NCBI RefSeq assembly: GCF_006345805.1
Contig: NC_042999.1
Span: forward strand, 8,618,001 to 8,682,000
DNA from: Octopus sinensis
Lineage: Eukaryota
Direction of reading: 5' to 3'
DNA length: 64,000 nt
Shown here: positions 872-64,000 of the stretch, piece after piece
Position numbering within the stretch: position 1 is the first letter of the stretch
Layout of the letters: the number at the start of each line of letters is the position of its first letter
Notes under the pieces: generated by a model
Database searches by the model: none
Told to the model about the DNA's origin: nothing
The model's input: the letters and a program-made list of their open reading frames with translations, nothing else
Program-made: the position numbers and the translations under genes

Positions 872-1440
872 AGAATTGACCCAAACATAAGATTTATGTT
901 TTATTGACCCTGGAAGGATAAAAAACAAAATCGACTCCAGCAGGATTTGAACCCCAACGTAAAGAAGACTGGAATGCTTCCTACAAAACAGTTTTTCCAA
1001 TACTTGAATGACTGTCAGTTGACCGTGTTGGAAGTAATTCTCTTGTAGACAAGAACTGAACTGAAAACCTGAGGAATTATGTTGACTTAGGATCATGTTG
1101 AATTAAAAGTATTACCGTAATTAAGGAATGTGACAATCATCCCCGTTTGTAATTAACACAAATGGAACGATGCAGAAACCCTCTCCCCCCCCCACACAAT
1201 AACGAGCTGACAGATTACCTATGAAGATAAACTTAGACACATTCCAGAGCACAACAGTACCCAGGTTTGTTGGGCAGGGTGTGGGGGGTGGGGGGTATTA
1301 TAACATTGAACAGGTTTCAACGTGTTTTTTTTTTGCAATCTGTTTAATTCCTTTTGATACGAGAAAGGAGACTCTTGGTGTAGTTCTTAAGTCTTTGGAT
1401 ATAATAATGCTAAAATAATACTTAACAACAACAACAACAA

Positions 1441-1695
1441 TAATAAGGGTTTCGAATTTTGGCACAAGGCCAGCAATTTTGGAGTGCAAATCAATTACAT
1501 TGGCTCTAGGACTCAACTGGATTTTTTTTTTTATTTTATCGACCTTGATAGGATGAAAGGCAAAGCTAATCTCTGTGGAATTTGAACTCAGGATGAAAGA
1601 AATGCTGCTTAGCAATTTGCCCAATGTGCTAATGATTCTGCCAGCTCACAGCCTTAACGATGATAATAATAATGATAATAATAATGATGATAATA

Positions 1696-1742
<47 letters not shown>

Positions 1743-3170
1743 AATAATAATAATAATCCTTTCTACTGAAAGAACAAGTCCGCAAATTTGGGGGAAGGGA
1801 TTAAGTTGATTACATTACCCCCAGTGCATAACTGGTACTTATTTAATCGACCCTGAAAGGATGAAAGGCAAAGTTGACCTTGGTGCAGAATGTAATGGCA
1901 GACGAAATACCACTAAGCATTTCATCTGGCGTGCTAATGATTCTGACAGTTCACCGTCTTAAATAATAATAATAATGATAATAATAATGGTTTGAAATTT
2001 TGCCCCAATGGCAGCTATTTTGGGGGAGGGGATGAGTTGATTATACATCGACACTCAGTGTTCAACTGGTATTTAATTTATTGACCCCGAAATGATGAAA
2101 GGTAAAGTTGACCTAAGCAGAATTTGAACTCACAACATTGGGACAGGCGAAATACCGCTAAGTATTTCATCCAGTGTGCTAACATTTCTGCCAGCTCACT
2201 GCCTTAATAATGATAATAATAATCCTTTCTATTAAAGGCACAAGCCCTGAAATTTGTGGGGTGGGGACTGGTCAATTACATCAACCCCAGTACGCAACTG
2301 GTACTTAATTTATCAACCCCGAAAGGATGAAAGGCAAAGCTGACCTGGGCAGAATTTAAACATAAAGCATAAAGATGTACAATCCTGTCTTAGCACATCT
2401 TGACATCATACAATCATAAAAAGGGGTTAAAAGAACATATCTGATATCTACCTCGGGTGTTTGGGTGGCACCCTGGGTGTAAGATGTACATACGACAGAT
2501 ATCAAGGAAAATTTACTTTACATGATAATAATTAAGGAGAATATTGAGGATAGCATGGACAGACAAAGGGTCTGGTGATGAAATGATGTGCCGGGCTGTG
2601 GTAAATAGGAAACTGATTTGTGAGATAAGGGCCAAGTAACTGAGATTTCTTGGTCATGTGATGAGGGTTTGGAGAATTTAGTGATGATTGGAAAGATTGA
2701 ATGGAGAAGAAGCAGAGGAAAGAGAATGATGATATGGATGTCAAGATTGAGGAATTGGTTGGAAGAAAGAGGCATCGAACATCAGGAAGAAGCAGAACTG
2801 TTTGTTACAGAATGCAGAGAACAGAGAATCGTGGTTGGACACGATCACTTGTGTCCTATATTCTGGACATCGCACCTAAACAATAATAATAATAATTCTT
2901 TGTATTAAAGGCACAAGGTCTGACATTTTTGGGGAGGGGGATCAGTCAATTACAGTGACCCAGGCACATAACTGGTACTTAATTTATTGACCCTAAACGG
3001 ATGAAAGGTAAAGTCGACCCCAGCAGCATTTGAACTCAGAACGTGATGACAGAAGAAATACCGCTAAGCATTTCACTCAGCATGCTAATGATTCTGCCAG
3101 CTCGCCGCCTTAAAGAATAATAATAATAATAACAATAATAGTTTCCTATTTTGGCCCAGAGCCAGCAATG
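1441..3170 (-). mobile_element. Chain of 5-6 older family-C SINEs (C2/C3 tails) separated by (AAT)/(GAT) runs
   Basis: Copies at about 1441-1655, 1752-1960, 1985-2205, 2221-2360 and 2895-3111, plus a tail at 3140-3170. The copies carry GGATGAAAGG(C/T)AAAG, mostly followed by GAATTTGAACTC (B box on the minus strand), and most end in CTGCCAGCTC.CCGCCTT. Confidence 0.8.
2535..2890 (+). pseudogene. RTE-clade (BovB-like) LINE, ORF2 C-terminus and (AAT)n tail
   Basis: Translates with a stop and frameshift as RRILRIAWTDK..NRKLICEIRAK*LRFLGHVMR / GLENLVMIGKIEWRRSRGKRM, matching the post-RT C-terminal motif of RTE LINEs (LKFLGHVMR..GLENL..GKIEG.R.RGR). Confidence 0.8.
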
Positions 3171-3439
3171 TTTTTTGTTTTTTCTGGTTATTTAATGAGA
3201 CATTTCTGCAGTGACAGATTTTGTCTTTCACCGTAGAATGTTATGGGTTATGGTTTTTATTGGCAATTTTTAAGTGGCACAACTCTTAGAAGCTCTGACT
3301 TTAAGTTAAAGAGCTTCAGTCTTGTCATAAACACCAGAATTGAAAACAGTGCTTCTCATCTCTTTACCATTCTTTTTTCCTTCGTAAGTTACTTGGTGAT
3401 CTCATTAGCGTTAGGTGAAGAATGCTCAGGACACCCTGT

Positions 3440-6431: not shown

Positions 6432-7190
6432 CTCATCATATCATCATCATCGTTTAACGGCCATTTTCCATGCTGGCATGGGTTGGACAGTTTGACTAGG
6501 GGTCTGGGAAGCCAGGAGACTGCACCAGGCCCCAATCTGATCTGGCAGTGTTTCTACAGCTGGATGCCCTTCCTAATGCCAACCACTCCGAGAGTGTAGT
6601 GGGTGCTTTTTATGTGCCATTGGCACAGGGGCCAGAGGGGGCTGGTATCGACCATGATTGGATGGTACTTTTTACATGCTACAAGCATGGGAGCCAGTCA
6701 AGGCAGTGTTGGCATCGGCCACATTTGAATGGTGCCTTTTACATGCTACTAGCACAGGAGCCAGTCGGGGTTAGGGGGCAGGCATTGACCATGTTCAGAT
6801 GGTGCTTTTTACGTGCCACCAGCACGGAGGCCACAACTACAATTTCCATTTGATTGTAATTTGATTTGATTTTGATTTTGATGTACTTGACTCAATAGGT
6901 CTCCTCAAGCATGGGATGTCACCCTACGATCCAAGGTACTTTTTGAGTGGGCTGGTTATGCAACACTGGTGTAGGTTACAGTTGTGGACTCACTTTATTT
7001 GCTGGGTCTTCTCAGTTACAGCATAATTCCAGTGGCCCCAGTCTTTCGTCATTGTCTCTGTGAGGCTCAACATTCAAAGGTCATGCTTCACCACTTCATC
7101 CCATGTCTTCCTGGGTCTACCTCTACCCCTGGATTCCTTCCACTGTTAGGGAGTGGCAAGCAATTGACTTGCTCCCTCCACCAAACTTGC
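6432..7190 (-). mobile_element. RTE-clade LINE 3' end (family D): ORF2 C-terminus, long 3' UTR and (GAT)n tail
   Basis: The minus strand at about 7135-6990 reads GRGRPRKTWDEVVKHDL*MLSLTETMTKDWGHWNYAVTEKTQQIK*, typical of the RTE C-terminal GRPRKTW motif, and runs on into the D UTR. Confidence 0.8.
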
Positions 7191-7767: not shown

Positions 7768-8100
7768 ATCATCATCATCATCATCGTTTAACGTCCGTTT
7801 TTCCATGATAGCATGGGTTGGATGGTTTGACAGGGGTCTGTGAAGCCAGGAGACTGCACCAGGTTCCAGTCTGATCTGGCAGTGTTTCTACAGCTGGATG
7901 CCCTTCCTAATGCCAACCACTCTGTGAGTGTAGTGGGTGCTTTTTATGTGCCACCGGCACAGGTGCCAGGGGAGGCTACTAGCAACGGACATGATCGGTT
8001 GGTGCTTTTTATGTGCCACCGGCACAGAAGCCAGTCGAGGCAGCGCTGGCATCGGTCATATACGGTGGTGCTTTTTACATGCCACCGGCACAGGTATCGT
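7768..8100 (-). mobile_element. 5'-truncated family-D copy
   Basis: D terminus with about 65-bp internal repeats; 12-bp TSD AAACAATT(G/A)TTC at 7756-7767 and 8101-8112. Confidence 0.85.
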
Positions 8101-12040: not shown

Positions 12041-12390
12041 TATCATTTAACGTCCGCTTTCCATGCTAGCATGGGTTGGACAGTTCAACTGGGGTCTGGG
12101 AAGCCAGAAGGCTGCACCAGGCCAGTCAGATCTGGCAGTGTTTCTACAGCTGGATGCCCTTTCTAACGCCAACCACTCCATGAGTGTAGTGGGTGCTTTT
12201 TATGTGCCACTGACACAGGTGCCAGACGAGGCTGGCGAACGGCCATGCTCGGATGGTGCTTTTTACATGCCGCTGGCATGGATGCCAGGCGAGGCTGGCA
12301 ACGGCCATGATCAGATGGTGTTTGTTACGTGCCACCAGCACGGAGGCCAGTCGACGCGGTGCTGGCTACGGCCACGTTCGGATGGTTCTC
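12001..12390 (-). mobile_element. 5'-truncated family-D copy
   Basis: (TCA)n tail followed by TTTAACGTCCGCTTTCCATGCTAGCATGGGTTGGAC. Confidence 0.85.
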
Positions 12391-12639
12391 TTATGTGCTC
12401 ATTTATTATATTGTTGGTGGCAGTGGTCGGGGTGATGGCAGCACTGAGAGCAACATTACTTTTTGTAATCAAGGATGAAGACATCTTTGAAAACAAAATT
12501 GTTTGTTTTCAAAAATCCATTATTGCAAAACTAAAACATAGCGTTTTGGTTTATTGTGACGCCATAAAAGGTTTTTGTTCTGACTCCCAAGTGGAGAGCA
12601 CTTGAAGGGTTTCTTGTAACCAAGGAAAAATATAATAAT

Positions 12640-13367
12640 CTTTTCTACTATTGGCACAAGGAACAAACTTTTTGGGGGAGGTGGGGGCCAGTCGATTAAA
12701 TCAACCCCAGTATGCAACTGGTACTTAATTTATCGACCCCGAAAGGATGGAAGGTAAAGTCAACTTTGGCAGAATTTGAACTCAGAACAGATGAAATACC
12801 TAATTCTTTACTATCCACAAGGGGCTAAACACAGAGAGGACAAACAAGGACAGACAAACGGATTAAGTCGATTACATCGACCCCAGTGCATAACTGGTAC
12901 TTATTTAATTGACTCTGAAAGGCAAAGTCGACCTGTGAAGAATTTGAACCCAGAACGTAGCGGCAGACGAAATACCTATTTCTTTACTGCCCACAAGGGG
13001 CTAAACACAGAGAAGACAAACAAGGACAGACAAACTGATTAAGTCGATTATATCGACCCCAGTGCGTGACTGGTATTTACTTAATCGACCCTGAAAGCGG
13101 AATTTGAACTCAGAACGTAACGGCAGACGAAATACCCATTTCTTTACTACCCACAAGGGGCTAAACACAGAAGGGATAAACAAGGACAGACAAACGGATT
13201 AAGTCGATTATATCGACCCCAGTGCGTAACTGGTACTTATTTAATCGACTCCGAAAGGATGAAAGGCAAAGTCGACCTCGGCGGAATTTGAACTCAGAAC
13301 GTAACTCAGAAATACCGCTAAGCATTTCGCCCGGCGTGCTAACGTTTCTGCCAGCTCGCCGCCTTAA
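12640..13367 (-). mobile_element. Family-C SINE array: one head, three C1 units and a terminal C2-tailed unit
   Basis: Junctions GAAATACC near 12795, 12970 and 13130; single head at 13315-13367. Confidence 0.9.
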
Positions 13368-14000: not shown

Positions 14001-14577
14001 CCAGGGGTGGGGTGTGTGTGTAAAAAGATAATTCCAGATAAAGAATGAATAGGGGTGATGTAAAGGAGAAGCAACACTTTGATCTTCTTAAACAGACACA
14101 ACCTACCTGTGTTTGTGGCATTCAGAACTAGAGTTACTCTCCGCTGTGAAATGGTTTGTGGCAGTGAACACGTGTGGCTGGGCAGGAGAAACCATGCCAA
14201 AGAATGAGAGGATCGAACGGAGGTGATACAGGGTAGAGGAAACTCATTGCTGACTAACTTTTTAGTGAAACAAAAATACCAGATTCTGTGTGTGTGCTTT
14301 GGGTGTTTGTGTATGTGGCAGGGGCCAAAAGACGATTGTGAAACACTGTGTGACCTGTTTAGATTATGCTATTATGAAAAAAGGAATGGAGAATGATGAC
14401 GGTGATAACGAGGAAGAGGAGAGAAAGGAGAGGGAAGAACAGAATAATAATGAGGAGGAGGAGGAAGAAGAGGAATAATTTAAGTTCCGGTCATATGAAT
14501 GGTGGGAATGTAGATAATTACGTTTTAGTAAAACATATATATATGTGTAGTGAGTGACTGATACTTCACATACGTAT

Positions 14578-14590
14578 TTATGTATGTATG

Positions 14591-14624
<34 letters not shown>

Positions 14625-17095
14625 TGTACGTATGTATGTATGTATGTATATATGTATGTATGTATTGTATGTATGTTTGTATGTATGTTTGTATGTGTGT
14701 ATGTGTGTGTGTATGTATGTATGTATGTATGTATGTATATATGTACGTATGTATGTATGTATGCATGCATGCATGCATGTATGTATGTATGTATGTATGC
14801 ATGCATGCATGCATGTATGTATGTATGTATGTATGTATGTATGTATGTATGCATGTATGTATGTATGTATGTATGTATGTATGCATGTATGTATGTATGT
14901 GTTGTATGTATGTATGTAAGTATGTATGTATGTATGTATGTGTGAATGTATGTATGTATGTATGTATGTATGCATGTATGTATGTATCCATGTATGTATG
15001 TATGTATGTATGTATGTATGCATGTATGTATGTATGTATGTATGTATGTATGCATGTATGTATGTATGTATGTGTGTATGTATGTATGTATGTATGTATG
15101 TATGTATATATGTACGTATGTATGTATGTATGCATGCATGCATGCATGTATGTATGTATGTATGCATGTATGCATGCATGCATGCATGTATGTATGTATG
15201 TATGCATGTATGCATGCATGCATGCATGTATGTATGTATGTATGTATGTATGCATGCATGCATACATGTATGTATGTATGTATGCATGTATGCATGCATG
15301 CATGCATGTATGTATGTATGTATGTATGCATGCATGCATGCATGTATGTATGTATGTATGTATGTATGTATGTATGCATGCATGCATGCATGTATGTATG
15401 TATGTATGTATGTATGTATATATGTACGTATGTATGTATGTATGCATGCATGCATGTATGTATGTATGTATGCATGTATGCATGCATGCATGCATGTATG
15501 TATGTATGTATGTATGTATGCATGCATGCATGCATGTATGTATGTATGTATGTATGTATGTATGTATGTATGCATGTATGTATGTATGTATGTATGTATG
15601 TATGTATGTATCCATGTATGTATGTATGTATGTATGTGTGAATGTATGTATGTATGTATGTATGTATGTAGCATGTATGTATGTATCCATGTATGTATGT
15701 ATGTATGTATGTATGCATGTATGTATGTATGTATGTATGTATGTATGTATGTATGTATGTATGTATGTATGTATGTATGTATGTATGTATGTGTGTATGT
15801 ATGTATGTATGTATGTATGTATATATGTACGTATGTATGTATGTATGCATGCATGCATGCATGTATGTATGTATGTATGCATGTATGCATGCATGCATGC
15901 ATGTATGTATGTATGTATGCATGTATGCATGCATGCATGCATGTATGTATGTATGTATGTATGTATGTATGCATGCATGCATGCATGTATGTATGTATGT
16001 ATGCATGTATGCATGCATGCATGCATGTATGTATGTATGTATGTATGTATGCATGCATGTATGTATGTATGCATGCATGCATGCATGTATGTATGTATGC
16101 ATGTATGTATGTATGTATGTATGCATGCATGCATGCATGTATGTATGTATGTATGTATGCATGTATGTATGTATGTATGTGTGTATGTATGTATGTATGT
16201 ATGTATGTATGTATATATGTACGTATGTATGTATGTATGCATGCATGCATGCATGTATGTATGTATGTATGCATGTATGCATGCATGCATGCATGTATGT
16301 ATGTATGTATGTATGTATGCATGCATGCATGCATGTATGTATGTATGCATGTATGCATGCATGCATGCATGCATGTATGTATGTATGTATGTATGCATGC
16401 ATGCATGCATGTATGTATGTATGTATGTATGTATGTATGCATGCATGCATGCATGTATGTATGTATATATGCATGTATGTATGTATGTATGTATGCATGC
16501 ATGCATGCATGTATGTATGTATGTATGTATGCATGTATTATGTATGTATGTATGTATGTATGTATGTATGCATGTATGTATCCATGTATGTATGTATGTA
16601 TGTATGTATGTATGCATGCATGCATGTATGTATGTATGTATGTATGCATGCATGCATGTATGTATGTATGTATGCATGTATGTATGTATGTATGTATGTA
16701 TGTATGTATGTATGCATGCATGCATGTATGTATGTATGTATGTATGTATGTATGCATGTATGTATGTATGTATGTATGCATGCATGCATGTATGTATGTA
16801 TGTATGTATGCATGTATGTATGTATGTATGTATGTATGCATGCATGCATGTATGTATGTATGTATGCATGTATGTATGTATGTATGTATGTATGTATGTA
16901 TGCATGTATGTATCCATGTATGTATGTATGTATGTATGTATGTATGTATGTATGCATGTATGTATGTATGTATGTATGTATGTATGCATGTATGTATGTA
17001 TGTATGTATGTATGTATGTATGTATGTATGTATGCATGTATGTATGTATGTATGTATGCATGTATGTATGTATGTATGTATGTATGTATGTATGC

Positions 17096-17128
<33 letters not shown>

Positions 17129-18428
17129 TGTATGCATGTATGTATGCATGTATATATGTATGTATGTATGTATGTATGCATGTATGTATGTATGTATGTG
17201 TGTATGTATGCATGTATGTATGTATGTATGTATGTATGCATGTATGTATGCATGTATATATGTATGTATGTATGTATGTATGTTTGTATGTATGTATGTA
17301 TGTATGTATGCATGCATGTATGTATGTTTGTATGTATGTATGTATGTATGTATGCATGTATGTATGTATGTATGTATGTATGTATGTATGTATGTATGTA
17401 TGTATGTATGTATGTATGTATGTATGTGTGTATGTATGTATGTATGTATGCATGTATGTATGTTTGTATGTATGTATGTATGCATGCATGCATGCATGTA
17501 TGTATGTATGTATGTATGTAAGTATGTATGTATGTATGTATGCATGTATGTATGTATGTATGTGTGTATGTATGTATGTATGTATGCATGTATGTATGTA
17601 TGTTTGTATGTATGTATGTATGTATGCATGTATGTATGTATGTATGTATGTATGTATGTATGTATGTGTGTATGTATGTATGCATGTATGTATGTATGTA
17701 TGTATGTATGTATGCATGTATGTATGCATGTATGTATGTATGTATGTATGTATGTATGTATGTATGTATGTATGTGTGTGTGTATGTATGTATGTATGTA
17801 TGTGTGTATGTATATGTATGCATGTATGTATGTATGTTTGTATGTATGTATGTATGTATGTATGTATGTATGTATGTATGTGTGTATGTATGTATGTATG
17901 TATGTATGTATGTATGTATGCATGTATGTATGTATGTTTGTATGTATGTATGTATGTATGTATGTATGTATGTATGTATGTGTGTATGTATGTATGTGTG
18001 TATGTATGTATGTATGCATGTATGTATGTATGTTTGTATGTATGTATGTATGTATGTATGTGTGTATGTATGTATGTATGTATGTATGTATGTATGTATG
18101 CATGTATGTATGTATGTATGTATGTATGTATGTGTGTATGTATGTATGTGTGTATGTATGTATGTATGTATGCATGTATGTATGTATGTTTGTATGTATT
18201 TATGTATGTATGTATGTATGTATGTATGTGTGTATGTATGTATGTATGTATGTATGTATGCATGTATGTATGTATGTATGTGTGTATGTATGTATGTATG
18301 TATGCATGTATGTATGTATGTTTGTATGTATGTATGTATGTATGTATGTATGTATGTATGTGTGTATGTATGTATGTATGTATGTGTGTATGTATGTATG
18401 TATGTTTGTATGTATGTATGTGTGTATG
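14578..18428. repeat. About 3.85-kb (TATG)n/(CATG)n tetranucleotide array
   Basis: Visible directly; rare variant units recur periodically. Confidence 0.98.
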
Positions 18429-19804: not shown

Positions 19805-20227
19805 TTTACTCTTTTACTCTTTTACTTGTTTCAGTCATTTGACTGCGGCCATGCTGGAGCACCGCCTTTAGTCGAGCAAATCGACCCCGGGACTTATTCT
19901 TTGTAAGCCCAGTACTTATTCTATCGGTCTCTTTTGCCGATAAGAGACGGGGACGTAAACACACCAGCATCGGTTGTCAAGCAATGCTAGGGGGACAAAC
20001 ACACACACACACGCAAACACATGCACACACACACATATATATATATATATATACATATATACGACAGGCTTCTTTCAATTTCCGTCTACCAAATCCACTC
20101 ACAAGGCATTGGTCGGCCCGAGGCTACAGTAGAAGACACTTGCCTAAGATGCCACGCAGTGGGACTGAACCCGGAACTATGTGGTTGGTTAGCAAGCTAC
20201 TTACCACACAGCCACTCATGCGCCTAT
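19805..20227 (-). mobile_element. SINE family A, full-length
   Basis: Reverse complement of the 9086 copy. Confidence 0.9.
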
Positions 20228-20948
20228 TTTCATTATTTTTTTTCCACAAAAGAAGGAAGAATTATTGTTTTTGAATCAAGAATTCTTTTATTATACTTTT
20301 TGATTTTATTTTATAGATCAACATGATGGGGGTGGCAAGTTAACAATGATATAAGAAATTCCGCCGACCCCTGGTTTAGACAGTTCTGTAGTTAAGAACG
20401 TTTTCAATTCATAATTACTGCATTTGTGAAATTTTTAAAACACGGTGTTGAAATTAGGAAATTCTGATAAACACTAATTAATGACTGGAGAATGAATAAT
20501 GTCTGAAGCAAACGAGGTCAACGAGGTCAATTTACGTTGACATTAGGGGTGGGCTCTTTGTCTCGTCTGACAATTTTTCTAATGCCGGTGGCATTAGAGA
20601 AACACTTCCAGTCGAATAATTTGTTGAACAGTCTGGGAATAGGAAATGCACCCAGCTGTAAAAAAATGTAAAAATATGCTAAGAAAAGAAGTCACAGATG
20701 GAAACAGCAGAAAATGGAGAGAAAAATATAGTTTTGTTAGAGACAAACACAACGAAGGTGTTTGGTTTGTGTCGTGTGTACAACAGGATGAAAGAGTGAG
20801 GTGAGATAGCATCGGATCCATCAAACTCTTGCTAGTCTGGCAGAATGGATGTAAAATAATAATGACGGTGACGATGGTGAACAAAATTTCCTGTTATAAA
20901 CTTGGAGACGTGCAAACTGCTGACATACTTAGTACAATATATGTGTGT

Positions 20949-22090: not shown

Positions 22091-22507
22091 TCTATTTCTT
22101 TACTACCCACAAGGGGCTAAACATAGAGGGGACAAACAAGGACAGACAAAGGGATTAAGTCGATTATATCGACCCCAGTGCGTAACTGGTACTTATATAA
22201 TCGACCAGGAAAGGATGAAAGGCAAAGTCTACCTCGGTGGAATTTGGACTCAGAATGTAACGGCAGAAGAAATACTTATTTCTTTACTACCCACAAGGGG
22301 TTAAACACAGAGGGGACAAACAAGGACCGACAAACGAATGAAGTCGATTACATCGACTCCAGTGCGTAACTGGTACTTATTTAATCTACCCCGAAAGGAT
22401 GAAAGGCAAAGTCGACCTCGGTGGAATTTGAACTCAGAACGTAACGGCAGACGAAATACCGCTAAGCATTTCGCCCGGCGTGTTTACGATTCTGCCAGCT
22501 CGCCTTA
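22091..22507 (-). mobile_element. Family-C SINE, head plus two C1 units
   Basis: 15-bp TSD CGGTTGTTAATTATA at 22076-22090 and 22508-22522. Confidence 0.92.
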
Positions 22508-24961: not shown

Positions 24962-25350
24962 TCTTTTACTTGGTATTTATTTCAATCAGTAGACTGCGGC
25001 CATGCTGGGGCACCGCCTTGAAGAATTTTAGTCGAACGAATCGATTCCAGTATTTATTTTTTTAAACCTGATATTTATTCTACTGGTTTCTTTGTTGAAC
25101 CACTAAGGTTACGGGGACGTAAACACATCAACACCGGTTGTCAAGCATTGGTGAGGGAAATCACAGACACAGACACACACATACGTGTACAACAGGCTTC
25201 TTTCAGTTTCCGTATACCAAATCAACGCACGAGGTTTCGGTCGGCCCGAGGCTACAGAAGAAGACACTTACCCAAGGTGCTACGCAGTGAGACTGAACCC
25301 GGAACCATGTGGTTAGAAAAGAAGCTTCTTACACACAGCCCCGCCTGCCT
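24962..25350 (-). mobile_element. SINE family A, older diverged subfamily
   Basis: GACTGCGGCCATGCTGGGGCACCGCC...GACTGAACCCGGAACCATGTGG. Confidence 0.8.
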
Positions 25351-25468
25351 ACAAAATTTTCATTTTGAGTTACTTTCTTATATAATCTGCTACATTTTGA
25401 AAATTTCTCCTACATTATTTTTTTATAAAACTGATCTGGTAACAAAGGTTTGGTTTCTGAAAGATACG

Positions 25469-25855
25469 TGGAAGCACTCCGTCGGTTACGACCACGAGGG
25501 TTCCGGTTGATCCGAATCAATGGAACAGCCTGCTCGTGAAATTAACGTGTAAGTGGCTGAGCACTCCACAGGCACGTGTACCCTTAACGTAGTTCTCGGG
25601 GATATTCAGCGTGACACAGAGAGTGACAAGGCCGGCCCTTTGAAATACAGGTACAACAGAAATAGGAAGGAAAGAGTGAGAGAAAGTTGTGGTGAAAGAG
25701 TACAACAGGGATCACCACCATCCCCTGCCGGAGCCTCGTGGAGCTTTTAGGTGTTTTCGCTCAATAAACACTCACAACGCCCGGTCTGGGAATCGAAACC
25801 GAGATCCTATGACCGCGAGTCCGCTGCCCTAACCACTGGGCCATTGCGCCTCCAC
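25469..25855 (-). mobile_element. SINE family B, tail type 1
   Basis: 14-bp TSD TTCTGAAAGATACG at 25455-25468 and 25856-25869. Confidence 0.93.
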
Positions 25856-34186: not shown

Positions 34187-35560
34187 GCGAAGGTGGTGAG
34201 CTTGCAAAATCGCTAACACGTGTTACAAACTCTAGCATTTTGAGTTCAAATTCGTCTGAGGTCACTGTACCTTAACTTTTTTTTTTCTTTCGGGGTCAAT
34301 AAAATACCTTTCCCTCTGAAAATTGAGAGTGAAGTAAACGATTAGCCCTTCCCCTCTAAATTGCTGGTTTGTGCCACAATTAAAAAGAAATATTATTAAG
34401 GTCGTGAACCGGCGCGACGGACAAAATGCTTAGTAGCATTTCTTCCGGCTCTTTATGTTCTGAGTTCAAATCTAGCCGAGGTTAAATTTCTTTTTCATTC
34501 TTTCGGGATTGATAAAATAAATACCAGTCAAGTACGGGGGGGGGGTCAATGTAATAGACTTACACCCCACCCCAATAAAATGACTGGCCTTGTGCCAAAA
34601 TTTGAAATTATTATTATTGAGGGATTCATCAAGGTGGCGAGATGGCCGAATAGTTAGCGCGCCGGACAAAATGCTTAGCGGTATTTCATCGGTCGTTACG
34701 TTCTGAGTTCAAATTCCGCCCAGGTCGACTTTGCCTTTCATCCTTTCGGGGTCGATTAAATAAGTACCAGTTACGCACTGGGGGCGATATAATCGACTTA
34801 ATCCGTTTGTCTGTCCTTGTTTGTCCCTTCTGTGTTTAGCCCCTTGTGGGTAGTAAAGAAATAGGTATTTCGCCTGCCGCTACGTTCTGAGTTCTAATTC
34901 CGTCGAAGTCAACTTTGCCTTTCATCTTTTCGGTATCGATGAGGTAAGTAGCAGTTGAGTACTGGAATCGATTCACTTGATTTGCCCGCTCCACCAAAAT
35001 TGCTAAAAGTGTTGCACCACAATTTGAAACCCTAATTATTGAGGGAATCAAAGGTTGTTAACTAGCAGAACCTTTAGAGTGTCGAAAAAACAATTTCGTT
35101 TAGCATTCTATGTACAGAGTTCATATCCCGCTGAGATCAACTTTATATCTCATCCCTCCGATAGCGACGAAATAACATACCCGTTTTATATTGGGAGCAT
35201 CGATGATTTCGACTGACGCTTTCCCTCGAAATTAGTAGTCTAAATCAGACACATTTTACGACGATCACCGAATCAGCCCTCATCGAATAGATTTATGTTA
35301 AAACGTATCGTAACCATTTGTAAGACCTTGGGTTATATAATCCAGTGAGTCTTTGGCGAGCTGGCAGAATCGTTAACACACCGGGCGAAATGCGTAGCCG
35401 TATTTCGTCTGCCGTTACGTTCTGAGTTCAAATTCCGCCGAGGTCGACTTTGCCTTTCATCCTTTCAGGGTCGATAAATAAAGTACCAGTTTCGCACTGG
35501 GTCGATGTAATCGACTTAATCCATTTGTCTTCCCTTGTTTGTCCCCTCTGTGTAAAGAAA
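34187..35560 (+). mobile_element. Chain of five family-C SINEs on the plus strand
   Basis: Heads near 34187, 34397, 34631, 35050 and 35355; most carry a GAGTTC(A)AATTC B box. Confidence 0.8.
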
Positions 35561-35779: not shown

Positions 35780-35975
35780 ACTTCAAATATCCTTTTCTAC
35801 TCGAGGTACAAGGCCCGAAATTTTTGGGGAAGGCATCAGTCGATTAGATCGACTCCAGTACACAACTGGTACTTAATTTATCGACCCCGAAAAGTTGATA
35901 GGCAAAATCGACCTCAGCGGAATTTGAACTCAGAACGTAGCGGCAGACATAATAACCATTTCTTTACTACCCACA
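35780..35975 (-). mobile_element. C2-tailed family-C body preceded by a C1 tail fragment
   Basis: The sense strand reads TTGTGGGTAGTAAAGAAAT|GGTTATTATGTCTGCCG...GGGCCTTGTACCTCGAGTAGAAAAGGAT. Confidence 0.75.
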
Positions 35976-36389
35976 AGACAAAAGATACCAACCGAATAAG
36001 TACCAGGCTTTTGAAAAGTACTGGGGTTAATTCATTCGACCAAGAATTCTTCAAGGTACGCGCCCCAGAATGGCCGCAGTCAAATGACGAAGACAAGTAA
36101 ATGATAAAAGAAGTGTAAAACTGTTATTTAGGCTCAGGTCAGATATGGAAATGTTGGCCCTTTTTCAACTGATAATAGGCCCAGACCTGTTAGGAAATGT
36201 TATGTCTTCACTTGAAACTGCTCATAAAAGTTTTTGGTAATTTCTACTAGACAGATATCATTTATATAAGTTTACGGGTACATAAAGTGCACGCAGCGAC
36301 ATAGCAAGGGTTGTCTGTCTCTGGGGCAAGGCAAGATTTGCGGGTAGAGTGTACTCTTTTGTTTATTTATTATTATTCTTTTATTCTTT

Positions 36390-43782: not shown

Positions 43783-44197
43783 TATTTCTTTATTACCCAC
43801 AAGGGGCTAAACATAGAGGGGACAAAGAAGGACAGACATAGGTATTAAGTCGATTACATCGACCCCAGTGCGTTACTGGTACTTAATTTATCGACCCCGA
43901 AAGGATGAAAGGCAAAGTCAATCTCGGCGGAATTTGAACTCAGAACGTAACAGCTGACCAAATACCTATTTCTTTACTACCCACAAGGAGTTAAACACAG
44001 AGGGGACAAACAAGGGCAGACATAAGTATTAAGTCGATTACATCGACCCCAGTGCGTTACTGGTACTTAATTTATCGACCCAGAAAGGATGAAAGGCAAA
44101 GTCGACTTCGGCAGAATTTGAACTCAGAACGTAGCGGCAGACGAAATACGGCTACGCATTTCGCCCGGCGTGCTAACGTTTCTGCCAGCTCGCCGCC
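43783..44197 (-). mobile_element. Family-C SINE, head plus two C1 units
   Basis: 7-bp TSD TTATACC at 43776-43782 and 44198-44204; removing it restores the mariner reading frame. Confidence 0.92.
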
Positions 44198-44572
44198 TTA
44201 TACCGTTAACAGCAAGCGATGCGTTGAGGCATCCAGAGAAGCTGTTAGGAATAACGAACACAACTGGAATGCGAAAAAGATCCACATTCACCATTACAAT
44301 GTGTAACATCTCACATCTTTGGCAACAAATCAAGCGATCATGAAATTGAGCTGGTCAGTGTCGCTACTGACCCCTCTCCCCATACGGCCCAAATTTGACG
44401 TCCTTTTAGATTCTACCTGTTTGGGTCTAATGAAGGACATTCTTCGTGAATAGAGACTTGATGATACGGATGAGGTAAAAACGACGGGAAGAAGCGGGCA
44501 CGACGGTGTACACCGGAAGGTTTCCGAAGACGAAAATTGAGTTCAATTATGGCGTAAATACACCACATGTGA

Positions 44573-48023: not shown

Positions 48024-48244
48024 ATACTCTTTTACTCTTTTACTCTTTTACTTATTTCAGTCATTTGACTGCGGCCATGCTGGAGCACCGCCTTTAATCG
48101 AGCAACTCGACCCCGGGACTTATTCTTTTTGTAAGCCCAGTACTTATTCTATCGGTCTCTTTTTGCCGAACCGCTAAGTGACGGGGACGTAAACACACCA
48201 ACATCGGTTGTCAAGCAATGCTAAGGGGGACAAACATAGACACA

Positions 48245-48294
<50 letters not shown>

Positions 48295-48462
48295 CATATA
48301 TACGACAGGCTTCTTTCAGTTTCCGTCTACCAAATCCACTCACAAGGCATCGGTCGGCCCGAGACTATAGCAGAAGACACTAGCCCAAGATGCCACGCAG
48401 TGGGACTGAACCCGGAACCATGTGGTTGGTTAGCAAGCTACTTACCACACAGCCACTCCTGC
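48024..48462 (-). mobile_element. SINE family A, near full-length
   Basis: Matches the A consensus. Confidence 0.9.
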
Positions 48463-49896: not shown

Positions 49897-50497
49897 TATT
49901 TCTTTATTACCCACAAGGGGGTTAAACATAGAGGGGACAAACAAGGACAGACATGGGTATAAAGTCGATTACATCGACCCCAGTGCGTAATTGGTACTTA
50001 ATTTATCGACCCCGAAAGGATTAAAGGCAAAGTCGACCTCGGCGGAATTTGAACTCAGAACGTAACGGCAGACGAAATACCTATTTCTTTACTACCCACA
50101 AGGGGCTAAACATAGAGGGGACAAGCAAGGACAGACAAACGGATTAAGTCGATTACATCGACCCCAGTGCGTAACTTGTACTTAATTTATCCACCCCGAA
50201 AGGATGAAAAGCAAAGTCGACGTCGGCGGAATTTGAACTCAGAACGTAACGGCAGACGAAATACCTATTTCTTTACTACCCACAAGGGCTAAACACAGAG
50301 GGTACAAACAAGGACAGGCAAACGGATTAAGTCGATTACATCGACCCCAGTGCGTAACTGGTACTAAATTTATCGACCCCGAAAGGATTAAAGGCAAAGT
50401 CGACCTCGGCGGAATTTGAACTCAGAACGTAACGGCAGACGAAATACCGCTGAGCATTTTGCCTGGCGTTCTAACGACTCTACCAGCTCGCCACCTT
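49897..50497 (-). mobile_element. Family-C SINE, head plus three C1 units (period 183-185 bp)
   Basis: ATACC junctions at 49892, 50077, 50261 and 50444; 18-bp TSD AAATCA(GT/TC)AATTCATACC at 49879-49896 and 50498-50515. Confidence 0.93.
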
Positions 50498-53252: not shown

Positions 53253-53671
53253 TATTTCTTTACTGCCCACAAGGGGCTTAACATAGAGGGGACAAACAAG
53301 GACAGACAAAGGGATTAAGTCGATTATATCGACCCCAGTGCGAAACTGGTACTTTATTTATCGACCCCGAAAGGATGAAAGGCAAAGTCGACCTCGGCGG
53401 AATTTGAACTCAGAACGTAAAGACAGACGAAATACCTATTTCTTTACTACCCACAAGGGGATAAACACAGAAGGGACAAACAAGGACAGACAAACGGATT
53501 AAGTCGATTATATCGACCCCAGTGCGTAACTGGTACTTATTTAATCGACCCCGAAAGGATGAAAGGCAAAGTCGACCTCGGCGGAATTTGAACTCAGAAC
53601 GTAACGGCAGACGAAATACTGCTAAGCATTTCGCCCGGCGTGCTAGCGTTTCTGCAAGCTCGCCGCCTTAC
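53253..53671 (-). mobile_element. Family-C SINE, head plus two C1 units
   Basis: 16-bp TSD TAAATGTTTATACATA at 53237-53252 and 53672-53687. Confidence 0.93.
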
Positions 53672-58509: not shown

Positions 58510-59365
58510 GAAATACCTATTTCTTTACTACACACAAGGGGCTGAACACAGAAGGACAAACAAGGACAGACAAACGGATTAAGTTGATTACGTCGACCCC
58601 AGTGCGTAACTGGTACTTATTTAATCGACCCCGAAAGGATGAAAGGCAAAGTCGACCTCGGCGGAATTTGAACTCAGAACGTAACGGCAGACGAAATACT
58701 TATTTCTTTACTAATCACAAGGGACTAAAGACAGAGAGGACAAACAAGGACAGACAAAGGGATTAAGTCTATTATATCGACCGCAGTGTGTAACTGGTAC
58801 TTATTTAATCGAACCCGAAAGGATGAAAGGCAAAGTTGACCTCGGGGGAATTTGAACTCAGAACGTAACGGCAGACGAAATACCTATTTCTTTACTACCC
58901 ACAAGGGGCTAAACACAGAGAGGACCAACAAGGACAGAAAAAGGGATTAAGTCGATTACATCGACCCCAGTGCGTAACTGGTACTTATTTAATCGATCCC
59001 GAAAGGATGAAAGGCAAAGTTGGCCTCGGCGGAATTTGAACTCAGAACGTAACGGCAGACGAAATACCTATTTCTTTACTATCCACAAAGGGCTACACAC
59101 AGAGGGAACAAACAAGGACATACAAAGGGATTAAGTCGATTACATCGATTCCAGTGCGTCACTGGTACTTAATGTATCGATCCTGAAAGGATGAAAGGCA
59201 AAGTCGACCTCGGCGGAATTTGAACTCAGAACGTAACGGCAGATGAAATGCCGCTAAGCCTTTCGTCTAGCGTGCTAACGATTCTGGCATGGGGTCGATG
59301 TAATCAACTTAAACCCTTCTTTGTCCCCTCTATGTTTAGCCCCTTGTGGGTAGTAAAGAAAATAT
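58510..59365 (-). mobile_element. Family-C SINE, four C1 units and a truncated head, abutting an inverted C1 tail fragment
   Basis: Junctions near 58510, 58692, 58877, 59061 and 59244; plus-strand tail at 59290-59365. Confidence 0.9.
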
Positions 59366-59895: not shown

Positions 59896-60276
59896 TATTT
59901 CTTTATTGCCCACAAGGGGCTAAACATAGAAGGGGGCAAACAAGGACAGGCAAACGGATTACATCGATTATATCGACCCGGTGCGCAACTGGTACTTAAT
60001 TTATCGACTCCGAAAGGATGAAAGGCAAAGTCGACCACGGCGGAATTTGAACTCAGAACGTAACGGCAGTCGAAATACCTATTTTTATTTCTTTACTACC
60101 CACAAGGGGCTAAACACAGAGGGGCCAAACAAGGACAGACAGGCGGATTAAGTCGATTACATCGACCTCAGTGCGTAACTGGTACTTAATTTATCGACCC
60201 CGAAAGGATGAAAGGCAAAGTCGACCTCAGCGGAATTTGAACTCAGAACGTATCGGCAGACGAAATACGGCCACGC
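59896..60276 (-). mobile_element. Family-C SINE, two C1 units and a truncated head
   Basis: Junction GAAATACCTATTT near 60071. Confidence 0.9.
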
Positions 60277-61285: not shown

Positions 61286-61691
61286 AAGGCGGCGAGATGG
61301 CAGAAACGTCAGCACGCCAAGCGTAGCCGTATTTCGTCTGCCGTTACGTTCTGAGTTCAAATTCCGCCGAGGTCGACTTTGCCTTTCATCCTTTCAGGGT
61401 CGATAACTTAAGAACAAGTTACGCACTGGGGTCGATATAATCGACTTAATCCCTTTGTCTGTCCTTGTTTGTCCCCTCTGTGTTTAGCCCCTTGTGGGTA
61501 ATAAAGAAATAAGTATTTCGTCTACCGTTACGTTCTGAGTTCAAATTCCGCCGAGGTCGACTTTGCCTTTCATCCTTTCGGAGTCGATTAAATAAGTACC
61601 AGTTACGCACTGTGGTAGATGTAATCGACTTAATCCGTTTGTCTGTCTTTGTTTGTCCCCTCTGTGTTTAGCTCCTTGTGGGTAGTAAAGA
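61286..61691 (+). mobile_element. Family-C SINE, head plus two C1 units
   Basis: Junction AAAGAAATAA|GTATTTCG near 61505; flanked by a 60-bp direct repeat. Confidence 0.9.
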
Positions 61692-61754
61692 AATATAAAT
61701 AATAGTTGCGACAATTTCTGATATTGTATTGAGATGGTAATATACAACTATATA

Positions 61755-61976
61755 GGGCGGCAGAATCGTTAGCACGCCGGGCGAAATGCTTAGCTGTATT
61801 TCGTCTGCCGCTACGCTCTGAGTTCAAATTCCGCCGAGGTCGACTTTGCCTTTCATCCTTTCGGGGTCGATAACTTAAGTACCAGTTACGCACTGGGGAC
61901 GATATAATCGACTTAATCCATTTGTCTGTCCTTGTTTACCCTCTCTATGCTTATCCCCTGCGGGCACTAAAGAAAT
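61755..61976 (+). mobile_element. Family-C SINE, head plus one C1 unit
   Basis: GGGCGGCAGAATCGTTAGCACGCCGGG...AAAGAAATAAAT. Confidence 0.88.
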
Positions 61977-62028
61977 AAATATATAACTGTGTCATATATA
62001 CATATGTGTGTGTGTGTACGTGTGTATG

Positions 62029-63673: not shown

Positions 63674-64000
63674 AAGGCGGCGAGCTGGCCGAAAGGTTAG
63701 CGCGCCGGGCGAAATGCTTAGCGCTATTTCGTCTGTCGTTACGTTCTGAGTTCAAATTTCGCCGAGGTCGACTTTGCCTTTCATCCTTTCGGGATCGATA
63801 AATTTAGTACCAGTTACGCACTGGGGTCGATGTGATCGACTTAATGTCTATGCCTGTCCTTGTTTGTCCCCTCTATGTTTAGCCCCTTGTGGCTAATAAA
63901 GGAATAGATCTTTCGTCTGTCGTTACGGTTTTGAGTTCAATTCCGCCGAGGTCGACTTTGCCTTTCCATCCTTTCGGGGTCGATAAATTAAGTACCAGTT
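63674..64000 (+). mobile_element. Family-C SINE, head plus one C1 unit plus the start of a second unit, cut by the window edge
   Basis: AAGGCGGCGAGCTGGCCGAAAGG..; junction GGAATAG|ATCTTTCGTCTG near 63905. Confidence 0.9.

What the first reader, a model, noticed from the sequence alone, without database searches (positions are those of the whole stretch)
12640..13367. Self-targeting SINE: family C grows head + n x 184-bp arrays by inserting into older copies of itself
Seen: at least 10 family-C insertions are multimers with one A-box head and 2-4 body units. Each new unit restarts at the same internal site (..AAAGAAATAG|GTATTTCGTCTGCCG). In this array the 3'-most unit carries a different, older tail (C2) from the three upstream C1 units, which simple tandem duplication cannot produce. 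Inference: new copies prime reverse transcription at the GGTATTTC site in the head of a resident copy and resolve their 5' end by homology, pushing the old body downstream. This would be a route from SINE to satellite with a built-in time axis. Outer TSDs do not discriminate between models, because they belong to the founder copy.
Basis: partly seen in the sequence, partly recalled or inferred. Interest (0 to 1): 0.8.

Follow-up and report, generated by a model that had tools for sequence, protein, structure and literature searches.

The report
SINE with tandemly stacked body units
A short mobile element that fills about an eighth of this window usually occurs as one promoter "head" followed by two to four 184-bp body copies; this layout is real and linked to retrotransposition, but similar arrays are already known in a clam and in reptiles, and the proposed "inserts into itself, oldest copy last" mechanism is only partly borne out.

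Summary
At 12640-13365 (- strand) one A-box head is followed by three core+C1-tail units and a fourth unit with a different C2 tail. Ten of 12 C1-bearing loci in the window are multimers, and all 15 internal junctions lie at the same site (…AAAGAAATA|GGTATTTC…).

Local tandem duplication is not the main source. Units within an array differ almost as much (8.9%) as units from different arrays (9.8%), and they mix sublineages. TSDs flank whole arrays. The sense strand has almost no T≥4 runs (3 versus about 40 expected), so a Pol III transcript could cover a whole array. The unit boundary is the loop/3'-arm edge of a conserved 13-bp RNA hairpin. The junction carries the same RRTAT motif as primary insertion sites.

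The proposed time axis is only partly supported:
- **For it:** older tail types sit at the 3' end (3 of 3 mixed arrays; tail variant p=0.003).
- **Against it:** the pooled age gradient among C1 units is not significant (p=0.26) and A9 contradicts it. Heads hold only about 1.5% of RRTAT sites yet would have to take 56% of insertions.

I favour RT-coupled, junction-specific unit addition plus retrotransposition of whole arrays. The window cannot separate same-event addition from later self-insertion. The architecture is already known from a clam and from squamates.

The parts
13317..13365 (-). A1 head: A-box-like 5' part (AAGGCGGCGAGCTGGCAGAAACGTTAGCACGCCGGGCGAAATGCTTAGC). Its 3' half forms the 5' arm of the 13-bp hairpin.
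13138..13316 (-). A1 unit 1: core with B-box-like GAGTTCAAATTCC plus C1 tail. It belongs to the young 'Y1' haplotype shared with A3u1 and A8u1, and has a small indel 8 nt after the unit start.
12976..13137 (-). A1 unit 2: core + C1 tail, with a 24-bp internal deletion.
12800..12975 (-). A1 unit 3: core + C1 tail, with an 8-bp deletion.
12632..12799 (-). A1 unit 4: core + C2 tail ending in ATTATTAT. It belongs to the older subfamily and keeps 3/10 CpGs.
22093..22507 (-). A2: head + 2 units. TSD TATAATTAACAAC(CG) flanks the whole array.
34631..35043 (+). A3: diverged head, one young C1 unit, then one old C3-tailed unit. TSD (ATT)GAGGGAWTCA. It is inserted on the (ATT)n tail of an older copy at 34453-34620.
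35792..35979 (-). A5: about 20 bp of C1 tail joined at the standard junction to a C2-tailed unit. No head and no detectable TSD.
43783..44199 (-). A6: head + 2 units. TSD GGTAT(AA). The two units share the private variant 94A.
49897..50497 (-). A7: head + 3 units. 18-bp TSD GGTATGAATT..TGATTT. The head is much more diverged than the units.
53254..53669 (-). A8: head + 2 units from different sublineages. Perfect 16-bp TSD. This is the best-preserved array.
58518..59365 (-). A9: inverted C1 tail fragment (59315-59365), 5'-truncated head and 4 units. A 7-bp TSD (TATTTCA) flanks the composite.
59897..60274 (-). A10: 2 units with only 6 nt of head. The internal junction carries 6 extra bases (AAAATA). 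No TSD found.
61286..61977 (+). A11 (head + 2 units, bracketed by a 58-bp direct repeat of flank) followed by A12 (monomer with its own TSD).
63674..64000 (+). A13: head + 1 unit + start of a second unit. It runs off the window end.
35350..35557 (+). A4: C1 monomer with an internally deleted tail. Its head is the GCGTAGCC type, with no RRTAT at the boundary.
1430..3200 (-). Chain of at least 5 older family-C monomers (C2/C3 tails). Each head abuts the (ATT)n tail of the copy upstream.

Best explanation
Family C1 is a Pol III-type SINE with three parts: an A-box head, a B-box core and a presumed LINE-derived tail. Its 184-bp core+tail module has become a reiterated unit.

**Arrays as retrotransposition units.** I infer that a Pol III transcript starts at the single head and runs through all units, because the sense strand is purged of T≥4 terminators. 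It would then be inserted by target-primed reverse transcription (TPRT) at RRTAT sites, leaving one pair of TSDs around the whole array.

**How units are gained.** Units are added one at a time, in register, on the 5' side of a unit start, by a reverse-transcription-coupled step. A DNA 3' end complementary to ...GGTAT at the head/core boundary primes copying of another SINE RNA from the exact tail end (...AAAUA). That boundary is the loop/3'-arm edge of a conserved 13-bp RNA hairpin.

**Timing.** I think this priming end is usually the nascent cDNA of the same integration event (template switching), and that most multi-unit structure is then inherited from array transcripts. The best candidates are the mixed arrays A1 and A3, where an old C2/C3 copy carries younger C1 units.

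**Shown:** the architecture, the junction, the TSDs, the terminator depletion, the hairpin, the RRTAT motif, the sublineage mixing and the subfamily polarity.

**Inferred:** Pol III read-through, template switching, and the timing of unit addition.
For: - TSDs flank whole arrays (A2, A3, A6, A7, A8, A9 composite). None of the 15 internal junctions has a TSD, a second head or a truncated unit.
- The sense strand has 3 T≥4 runs in 4,966 bp, against about 40 in shuffles (minimum 23).
- The unit starts at the first base of the 3' arm of a 13-bp hairpin. The hairpin is kept across 14 copies, with a two-sided compensatory change in the GCGTAGCC head type.
- The junction equals a primary 3' junction, AAATA|RRTAT.
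- Mean within-array distance is 8.9% versus 9.8% between arrays, and most nearest neighbours lie in other arrays. This rules out recent local duplication.
- Private-mutation loads are homogeneous within arrays (p=0.59) and heterogeneous between them (p=0.07).
- Head type travels with the first unit: GCGTAGCC heads go with GATAAATTAAG cores in 4 of 4 cases, and in A8 and A11 the head matches u1 rather than u2.
- 174G-type tails are almost never terminal (13 internal versus 2 terminal). This is expected if they spread only as internal passengers.
- A9 fits a single event on a longer array RNA: a 174A-type tail fragment is inverted at its 5' end, and a 7-bp TSD (TATTTCA) overlapping a unit start (GGTATTTC) flanks the composite.
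- Multimers outnumber monomers 10:2, although heads are only about 1.5% of RRTAT sites.
Against: - In the mixed arrays the 3' unit belongs to much older families and is itself decayed. A1u4 is about 12% from the C2 star centre and keeps 3/10 CpGs. A3u2 differs pairwise by 27-37% from the other C2/C3 copies. A single event would need old, decayed copies as initiating templates in 3 of 3 cases.
- First units have fewer private mutations than last units in 6 of 8 arrays. The gradient is significant if A9 is excluded (p=0.016), but that exclusion is post hoc.
- Pol III transcripts would end in flanking T runs 10-215 nt downstream. A plain end-to-end template jump should therefore carry flank sequence into junctions, and none does. 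A tail-specific re-initiation on a cDNA end has to be assumed.
- The heads of A3 and A7 are far more diverged than their first units (p=0.0008 and p=0.003). This needs an extra switch to an old template.
- No two arrays in the window are recognisable copies of one master array.
- Only 24 units at 13 loci could be analysed.
Confidence: 0.42

Rival explanations
1. One reading: sequential self-targeting. Each unit is a separate, later TPRT event. The partner LINE nicks a resident copy at the RRTAT site (GC|GGTATTTC) between head and core and copies a new SINE RNA from its tail. The cDNA's 5' end is resolved by homology with the resident head, so the old body is pushed downstream and the array records time from 5' (young) to 3' (old).
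For: - The internal junction has the family's primary target signature. Only R (G or A) occurs at the junction base, although 5/12 heads carry C/T there.
- All three mixed arrays have the older family 3'-most, and it is old from its first 10 nt or fewer.
- 174A/196A tails are terminal (p=0.003). The tail-only copy at 46470-46540 also carries them, which suggests they are ancestral.
- First units have fewer private mutations than last units in 6 of 8 arrays, and A1 shows a CpG trend of 10/11, 8/10, 7/12 and 3/10.
- All three monomers (A4, A12, L001) lack RRTAT at the head boundary, and all six loci whose heads keep RRTAT there are multimers.
- The older subfamilies show sequential self-targeting at (ATT)n tails.
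- Every junction is an orthodox, exact tail-end initiation.
Against: - It needs a roughly 40- to 80-fold preference for heads beyond the motif.
- The pooled gradient is not significant (p=0.26). A9 runs 8,3,8,4, and non-CpG divergence in A1 u1-u3 is flat at 8, 8 and 8 substitutions.
- There are no internal TSDs, although primary insertions make 7-18 bp TSDs.
- The sequences after the head and after the junction differ at 3/16 sites in A8 and 4/16 in A3.
- There are no double heads and no truncated internal units (0/15).
- The head lineage matches u1 in A8 and A11.
- 13 of 15 174G-type units would have to have landed in heads, against 2 of 9 for 174A-type units.
- Some adjacent units share private variants.
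- Once internal junctions exist they are equally good targets, so unit order need not be chronological.
Confidence: 0.33
2. DNA-level origin. Arrays arise by unequal crossing-over, replication slippage, or break repair that copies out of register from another multimeric locus (ectopic gene conversion or SDSA). Retrotransposition only seeds the founder copy.
For: - Units are perfectly in register and there are no internal TSDs.
- There is an excess of rare variants shared within arrays: 4 versus 1.35 expected, in A2, A6, A9u2/u3 and A7u1/u3.
- Within-array distance is slightly lower (permutation p=0.047).
- All four allele combinations occur between informative sites, indicating homologous exchange within the family.
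- A recipient's own head and tail would automatically stay terminal.
- The literature invokes unequal recombination for similar arrays (PMC11481361, PMC10702118).
Against: - Most units have their nearest relative in another array, and units within an array differ by 5.5-14%.
- Arrays mix sublineages and even tail families.
- In all three mixed arrays the old/new boundary falls within 10 nt of the unit junction rather than anywhere in the 118-bp homologous core (about (10/118)^3 by chance).
- It does not explain why the junction carries the RRTAT insertion signature, why it sits at the RNA hairpin loop, or the 6 extra bases at the A10 junction.
- It cannot create the first tail-to-core junction.
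Confidence: 0.1
3. Fixed multimeric master genes only. Like the Alu dimer, a few dimeric, trimeric or tetrameric source genes arose once, and all arrays are plain copies of them.
For: - TSDs lie around whole arrays, and there are no internal terminators.
- Dimers predominate.
- There is a position-specific tail variant: G in first units, A in last units.
Against: - First and last units occur in all four combinations of the core variant (79/82).
- The same Y1 first unit sits upstream of three unrelated downstream units (A1, A3, A8).
- Unit number varies from 2 to 4.
- Mixed arrays have three different old terminal units.

Many independent additions are therefore required.
Confidence: 0.05

Closest known systems
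TSD1-(SINE)n-TSD1 tandem SINE structures in the blood clam Scapharca/Anadara broughtonii (PMC11481361, Mob DNA 2024)
   Same: It is also a mollusc. One TSD pair surrounds the array. The first copy has a complete tRNA-related head, and later copies are truncated at one fixed position of the head. Arrays have a few to about 15 units and may include other families.
   Different: In the clam, the first and middle copies also lack part of the 3' tail, and only about 3% of SINEs are involved. Here every unit keeps the tail to its last base, the junction equals a primary insertion junction, and 10 of 12 C1-bearing loci in the window are multimers. The clam paper gives no mechanism for this class (it suggests recombination between TSDs for arrays in general).
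SINE-derived satellites (sSat) of squamate reptiles (PMC10702118, Mob DNA 2023)
   Same: These are tandem repeats made of part of a SINE, with a longer terminal unit that reaches the SINE terminus. They are proposed as a SINE-to-satellite route.
   Different: sSats reach up to about 1000 units, become homogenised and are subtelomeric. Here arrays have 2-4 units that differ by 5-14%, are dispersed, and are each bounded by TSDs. They behave as mobile elements and not as satellites.
Dimeric and multimeric SINEs that amplify as units (for example Alu) and multimers of full-length copies (Dip/B1 in jerboa, cited in PMC10702118)
   Same: They have several SINE-derived modules behind one active promoter. 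Multimer frequency can approach half of all copies.
   Different: Alu has a fixed dimer of two head-like monomers, and the Dip multimers are complete copies with their own heads. Here only the B-box core + tail is reiterated, and the unit number is variable.
RT template switching or jumping: R2 reverse transcriptase end-to-end jumps, L1/U6 chimeras (PMC4476161), and the accepted model for how SINEs acquire LINE tails (my own knowledge of Bibillo & Eickbush 2002, Buzdin 2002, Ohshima & Okada 2005)
   Same: Several RNAs are concatenated in one TPRT event. TSDs surround the chimera, and the 3'-most part is the template on which RT initiated.
   Different: Known jumps go from a template's 5' end to an acceptor's free 3' end. 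Here the switch would occur at an internal hairpin loop and land exactly at a tail end that is not the Pol III transcript's 3' end.
Self- or repeat-targeting non-LTR elements: Dong/R4 in (TAA)n, Zepp clusters in Chlorella, Tx1L in Tx1D (my own knowledge). Dong-R4 has the most recently active LINE insertions reported in Octopus vulgaris (1,129; PMC13282606).
   Same: Insertion goes preferentially into sequence supplied by earlier copies. The older family-C subfamilies here, with (ATT)n tails, form head-to-tail chains in just this way (1430-3200).
   Different: In those systems every inserted copy is complete and the target is a tail or microsatellite. The C1 arrays have one head and a junction inside the tRNA-like region.

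Membership tests
Pol III-transcribed, tRNA-type SINE mobilised by a LINE | Internal A-box and B-box promoter motifs in the 5' region | tested here: met
   By eye, TGGCAGAATCG in the head matches TRGCNNAGTGG at 9/11 positions. GAGTTCAAATTCC, 26 nt into the unit, is B-box-like with one extra base. These are motif matches only; promoter activity was not tested.
Pol III-transcribed, tRNA-type SINE mobilised by a LINE | Recognisable tRNA homology or cloverleaf in the head | tested here: not met
   ARAGORN finds no tRNA-like gene in the window. An Rfam scan of A8 at E≤10 gives no tRNA hit. The predicted fold is a long hairpin rather than a cloverleaf. A tRNA origin remains unproven.
Pol III-transcribed, tRNA-type SINE mobilised by a LINE | Target-site duplications of variable sequence flanking the element | tested here: met
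   TSDs found: A2 13-15 bp, A3 about 13 bp, A6 5-7 bp, A7 18 bp, A8 16 bp, A9 composite 7 bp, A12 11 bp, A4 about 14 bp. None was found for A1, A5 or A10.
Pol III-transcribed, tRNA-type SINE mobilised by a LINE | No internal Pol III terminator (T≥4) on the sense strand | tested here: met
   3 runs in 4,966 bp against a mean of 40 in shuffles (minimum 23). All three are private to single copies.
Pol III-transcribed, tRNA-type SINE mobilised by a LINE | 3' tail shared with a partner LINE | not testable with these tools
   No LINE with this 3' end is in the window. A tail-only copy at 46470-46540 is a lead. No genome of the organism could be reached.
CORE-SINE superfamily (octopus OR2 is listed as a member in PMC4758252) | Central CORE domain similar to that of MIR/CORE-SINEs | tested here: inconclusive
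Only GGGG..ATAA.T.AGTACC..TAC resembles it. This is a lead, not a membership.
TSD1-(SINE)n-TSD1 tandem SINE structure (PMC11481361) | One TSD pair around the array; first copy with a full head; later copies head-truncated at one fixed position | tested here: met
TSD1-(SINE)n-TSD1 tandem SINE structure (PMC11481361) | First and middle copies truncated in the 3' tail | tested here: not met
   All 15 internal units keep the tail to ...AAAGAAATA.
Satellite DNA / SINE-derived satellite (PMC10702118) | Long, homogenised arrays | tested here: not met
   Arrays have 2-4 units with within-array distances of 5.5-14%, and each array is bounded by unique flanks or TSDs.
   Pooled permutation p=0.26, or 0.016 without A9 (a post hoc exclusion). 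First unit below last in 6/8 arrays. A1 shows a CpG trend, but non-CpG divergence is flat among u1-u3.
   3 of 3 mixed arrays have C2/C3 at the 3' end. For 174A tails, 7/9 are terminal or monomeric versus 2/15 internal (p=0.003). This is also predicted by template switching with tail-dependent initiation.
   4 of 22 doubleton variants lie within an array, against 1.35 expected (Poisson p≈0.05). The effect is small.
   No other genome, haplotype or read data for this organism could be reached.

The most novel reading that the evidence does not exclude
The partner LINE machinery of C1 homes to the head/core boundary of resident family-C copies. Guidance could come from the GGTATTTC site, or from the Pol III complex sitting between the A and B boxes, as Dictyostelium TRE elements and Ty3 do at tRNA genes. 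The new cDNA is resolved by homology, so each locus stacks units in roughly chronological order. That would be a self-targeting SINE building proto-satellites with an internal clock.
Probability: 0.3. Interest if true: 0.75.

Novelty: new variant of a known kind. Interest (0 to 1): 0.5.

Why it matters
If unit addition is coupled to reverse transcription at a defined RNA hairpin or RRTAT site, this family gives a sequence-level handle on how a dispersed SINE turns into tandem DNA. The SINE-to-satellite literature currently attributes that step to unspecified 'initial duplication' or unequal recombination.

The family appears to be very abundant, at 12% of this window. This is comparable to the 11.6% SINE content reported for Octopus vulgaris in PMC13282606, although the window's species is not established. 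A genome-wide census of arrays, orthologous loci in sister species and long-read polymorphism could decide between same-event concatenation and later self-insertion.

Variable-length, terminator-free SINE arrays also matter in practice. Repeat annotation pipelines merge or split them. In species with heavy RNA editing they can form long structured RNAs.

Tried and rejected
1. **More copies from elsewhere.** A peptide spanning a unit junction gave one hit among 5.8 billion proteins: a 543-bp ENA metagenome contig carrying a monomer. Exact-pattern scans of metagenome, prokaryote-genome and viral contig collections gave 0 hits. Two window ORFs are not on record. All statistics therefore rest on 24 C1 units.
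2. **Recent local tandem duplication.** Rejected on distances and nearest neighbours.
3. **A single fixed multimeric master.** Rejected on haplotype combinations.
4. **A-to-I editing as the cause of the G/A polarity at tail positions 174 and 196.** Rejected. Of 16 differences between A6u1 and A6u2, only 2 are A→G in the required direction.
5. **Headless arrays A5 and A10 as proof of whole-array retrotransposition.** Weakened, because neither has a detectable TSD.
6. **A3 as clean proof of insertion into an old copy** (old head, young unit, old body; p=0.0008). Weakened. Its head type (GGCC…AGCGCGCC) matches C1b-type copies (A13, L001) rather than the C3-type heads seen in the window. The 16 nt after the head and after the junction differ at 4 sites, so they are not a duplicated target.
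7. **tRNA identity of the head.** Not detected.
8. **CORE-domain membership.** Not significant.
9. **Microhomology between the RNA 3' end and target starts.** No consistent overlap was found. What I did note is that the tail end GAAATA is the reverse complement of TATTTC at the unit start, so the junction is a near-palindrome.
10. **Sequence string search of the literature.** 0 papers.
Full report
**What is there.**

The window is eukaryotic and very rich in microsatellites and short interspersed repeats. Its species could not be established. The only external relative found is a monomer of the same family on a 543-bp metagenome contig. A cephalopod origin is my guess, based on repeat content and on the literature (PMC13282606, PMC4758252).

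The flagged interval is one element on the minus strand. Its parts are:
- a 49-bp head with an A-box-like motif (13365-13317);
- three units of core + C1 tail (13316-13138, 13137-12976, 12975-12800);
- a fourth unit (12799-12640) with the same core but a different tail (C2), ending in ATTATTAT.

The repeated 184-bp unit begins GGTATTTCGTCTGCCG, contains the B-box-like GAGTTCAAATTCC, and ends ...CCCTTGTGGGTAGTAAAGAAATA.

**Recurrence.**

blastn with head, core and tail queries, together with TRF, finds the same layout at ten loci. These are A1, A2, A3, A6, A7, A8, A9, A10, A11 and A13, with 2-4 units each. Only two C1 monomers occur (A4, A12). A5 is a headless fragment that joins about 20 bp of C1 tail to a C2-tailed unit at the same junction. 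All 15 internal junctions are at the same site. Three read A instead of G at the first base, and one (A10) has six extra bases. Family C covers 12.4% of the window, and 18 of the 19 GGTATTTC octamers lie in it.

**What the arrays are not.**

They are not recent local tandem duplications:
- Mean p-distance between units of one array is 0.089, against 0.098 between arrays (permutation p=0.047). For most units the nearest relative lies in another array.
- Arrays mix sublineages. A8u2 shares three rare variants with the monomer A4. A1u1, A3u1 and A8u1 share a haplotype (79T, 82A, 111A, 169T) but sit upstream of three unrelated units.

They are not copies of one fixed multimeric master either, because all four first/last combinations of the core variant occur. 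There is a small excess of rare variants shared within arrays (4 of 22 doubletons against 1.35 expected). All four allele combinations occur between informative sites. Some homologous exchange or in-register copying therefore takes place as well.

**Features that tie the arrays to retrotransposition.**

1. TSDs flank whole arrays: A2 13-15 bp, A3 about 13 bp, A6 5-7 bp, A7 18 bp, A8 16 bp. A 7-bp TSD flanks the A9 composite. No internal junction has a TSD, a second head or a truncated unit.
2. The sense strand is 33% T yet has only 3 T≥4 runs in 4,966 bp, against about 40 in shuffles (minimum 23). A head-initiated Pol III transcript should therefore run through every unit and stop in the 3' flank (first T≥4 found at +10 to +215 for nine elements; none within 400 nt for A11 and A12). 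Arrays can thus act as source genes for arrays.
3. Primary C1 insertions are followed by RRTAT in 6 of 10 cases (background 0.47%, p=2e-12). Three of these sites begin GGTAT; the TSD of one (A9) overlaps a full GGTATTTC. The internal junction AAATA|GGTAT(TTC) has the same signature. Five of 12 heads have C or T at the first junction base, but none of 14 junctions does (p=5e-4).
4. In the predicted RNA fold the last 13 nt of the head before a 4-nt loop pair with the first 13 nt of the unit. The unit starts exactly at the first base of the 3' arm. The helix is kept in 14 copies, including old ones. The GCGTAGCC head type carries a two-sided compensatory change at the closing pair. Four of the 13 pairs are G·U, so this is an RNA feature and not a DNA one.

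**Testing the time axis.**

*For it:*
- In all three mixed arrays (A1, A3, A5) the older family is 3'-most. C2/C3-type copies differ pairwise by 20-37%.
- A1u4 keeps 3/10 CpGs, against 10/11, 8/10 and 7/12 in u1-u3.
- The old units look old from their first 10 nt or fewer, so the old/new boundary is the junction itself.
- Within C1, the tail variant 174A (with 196A) is terminal or monomeric in 7 of 9 cases and internal in 2 of 15 (p=0.003). A tail-only copy at 46470-46540 and the external monomer also carry it.
- First units have fewer private mutations than last units in 6 of 8 arrays.

*Against it:*
- The pooled within-array permutation test gives p=0.26. A9 runs 8,3,8,4.
- Private loads are homogeneous within arrays (chi-square p=0.59) and tend to differ between arrays (p=0.07).
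- Non-CpG divergence of A1 u1-u3 is flat (8, 8 and 8 substitutions).
- The heads of A3 and A7 are far more diverged than any of their C1 units (p=0.0008 and p=0.003). The A7 head also exceeds its putative founder. The A3 head type matches C1b-type copies rather than the C3-type heads in the window.

The subfamily polarity is real. A clock-like order of insertion is not demonstrated.

**Weighing the mechanisms.**

Two mirror-image models use the same chemistry. In both, a DNA 3' end complementary to GGTAT at the head/core boundary primes copying of a SINE RNA from its tail end. In the alternative it is the nascent cDNA of the same integration event.

- Heads are about 1.5% of RRTAT sites but would have to take about 56% of C1 insertions.
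- 13 of 15 174G-type units would have had to land in heads, against 2 of 9 for 174A-type units.
- There is no internal TSD, although primary insertions make 7-18 bp TSDs. In the best-preserved array, A8, the 16 nt after the head and after the junction differ at 3 sites.
- Head type follows the first unit.
- Internal units are never truncated.

- The terminal units in the mixed arrays are old and decayed.
- Every junction is an orthodox, exact tail-end initiation.
- Pol III transcripts would not end at the tail, so a simple end-to-end jump should import flank sequence, and none is seen.
- Monomers occur only among loci whose heads lack RRTAT.

Whole-array retrotransposition, which the terminator depletion makes likely, reduces the number of addition events either model needs.

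A9 is best read as a single event on a longer array RNA. Its 5' end carries an inverted 174A-type tail fragment. The 7-bp TSD flanking the composite overlaps a GGTATTTC at the 3' junction.

I put same-event addition plus whole-array copying at about 0.42, sequential self-insertion at about 0.33, DNA-level recombination at about 0.10, and fixed masters at about 0.05. For the flagged array A1 specifically, later addition of C1 units to an old C2 copy is at least as likely as a single event.

**Context from the older subfamilies.**

The C2/C3 copies, whose tails end in (ATT)n, form a head-to-tail chain of at least five complete monomers at 3200-1430. Each head sits on the previous tail. A3 likewise sits on the (ATT)n tail of an older copy. 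This is ordinary microsatellite-directed self-targeting of the kind known for Dong/R4 elements (my own knowledge). Dong-R4 has the most recently active LINE insertions reported in O. vulgaris (PMC13282606). It shows that stacking on resident copies does occur here, but at tails and with complete copies.

**Comparison with what is known.**

The architecture has been described in the blood clam: one TSD pair, a full head on the first copy only, and later copies truncated at one head position (PMC11481361). SINE-derived tandem repeats with a SINE terminus at one end are known in squamates (PMC10702118). [quoted passage not shown]

The present case differs in several ways. Every unit has a complete tail. 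The junction has the signature of a primary insertion. The boundary coincides with an RNA hairpin loop. Multimers dominate, at 10 of 12 C1-bearing loci in the window. Mixed arrays show a strict subfamily polarity.

A tRNA origin for the head and CORE-SINE membership could not be shown. I classify this as a new variant of a known kind. The mechanism question is open and testable genome-wide.

Noticed in passing
window 1430-3200 (- strand); also 34453-34620 next to A3: At least five older family-C monomers (C2/C3 tails) lie head to tail. Each head sits directly on the (ATT)n tail of the copy upstream. One tail has expanded into (ATC/ATT)n at 1659-1757. This suggests microsatellite-directed insertion, as with Dong/R4 elements.
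   Followed up: partly
window 61228-61977: A 58-bp direct repeat of flank (2 mismatches) brackets the dimer A11, and its second copy leads straight into the monomer A12, which has its own 11-bp TSD. A11u1 and A12u1 share a variant (GATAACTTAAG) found nowhere else in the window. This is either an unusually long TSD or a segmental duplication; the order of events is unclear.
   Followed up: partly
window 59290-59365: An inverted C1 tail fragment (174A type, starting exactly at the tail end) is fused to the 5'-truncated head of the tetramer A9. A 7-bp TSD (TATTTCA) flanks the composite. This resembles twin priming or a double-TPRT event.
   Followed up: partly
window 14574-18428: A (GTAT)n microsatellite of about 3.85 kb (964 copies, 91% matches).
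   Followed up: no
window 6548-6853, 7936-8093, 12192-12354: Another dispersed repeat family with 62-65-bp internal tandem repeats (GGTGCTTTTTAYGTGCCACYGGCAC...). One copy lies about 280 bp beyond the 3' end of A1.
   Followed up: no
window ~20000-20270, 25150-25500, 48210-48500, 55040-55500; L001 423-543: A third SINE-like family, seen as recurrent ORF artefacts (...LPKMPRSGTEPGTMWL...). In the window it is regularly adjacent to (CA)n/(TA)n runs. It also occurs on the external contig next to a family-C monomer.
   Followed up: no
window 46470-46540 (+): A C1-type tail (174A/196A variant) with no family-C core or head upstream. It could be the 3' end of the partner LINE, or another SINE family using the same tail.
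   Followed up: no
window 32019-32393 (-): A 124-aa ORF whose sequence looks by eye like the C-terminal part of a Pif1/Helitron-type helicase. It was not searched against family libraries.
   Followed up: no
window 50448-50497 and 34631-34696: The heads of A7 and A3 are 13-15% diverged while their adjacent units are 2-5% diverged. They share two changes (GGTGG, GGCAAA/GACAAA; both CpG sites). No model explains A7 well, because its head also looks older than its putative founder unit.
   Followed up: partly
all family-C junctions, e.g. window 13130-13145: The tail end GAAATA is the reverse complement of TATTTC at the unit start, so every junction (GAAATA-GG-TATTTC) is a near-palindrome. The tail end mimics the head arm (CGAAATG) that pairs with the unit start.
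   Followed up: no
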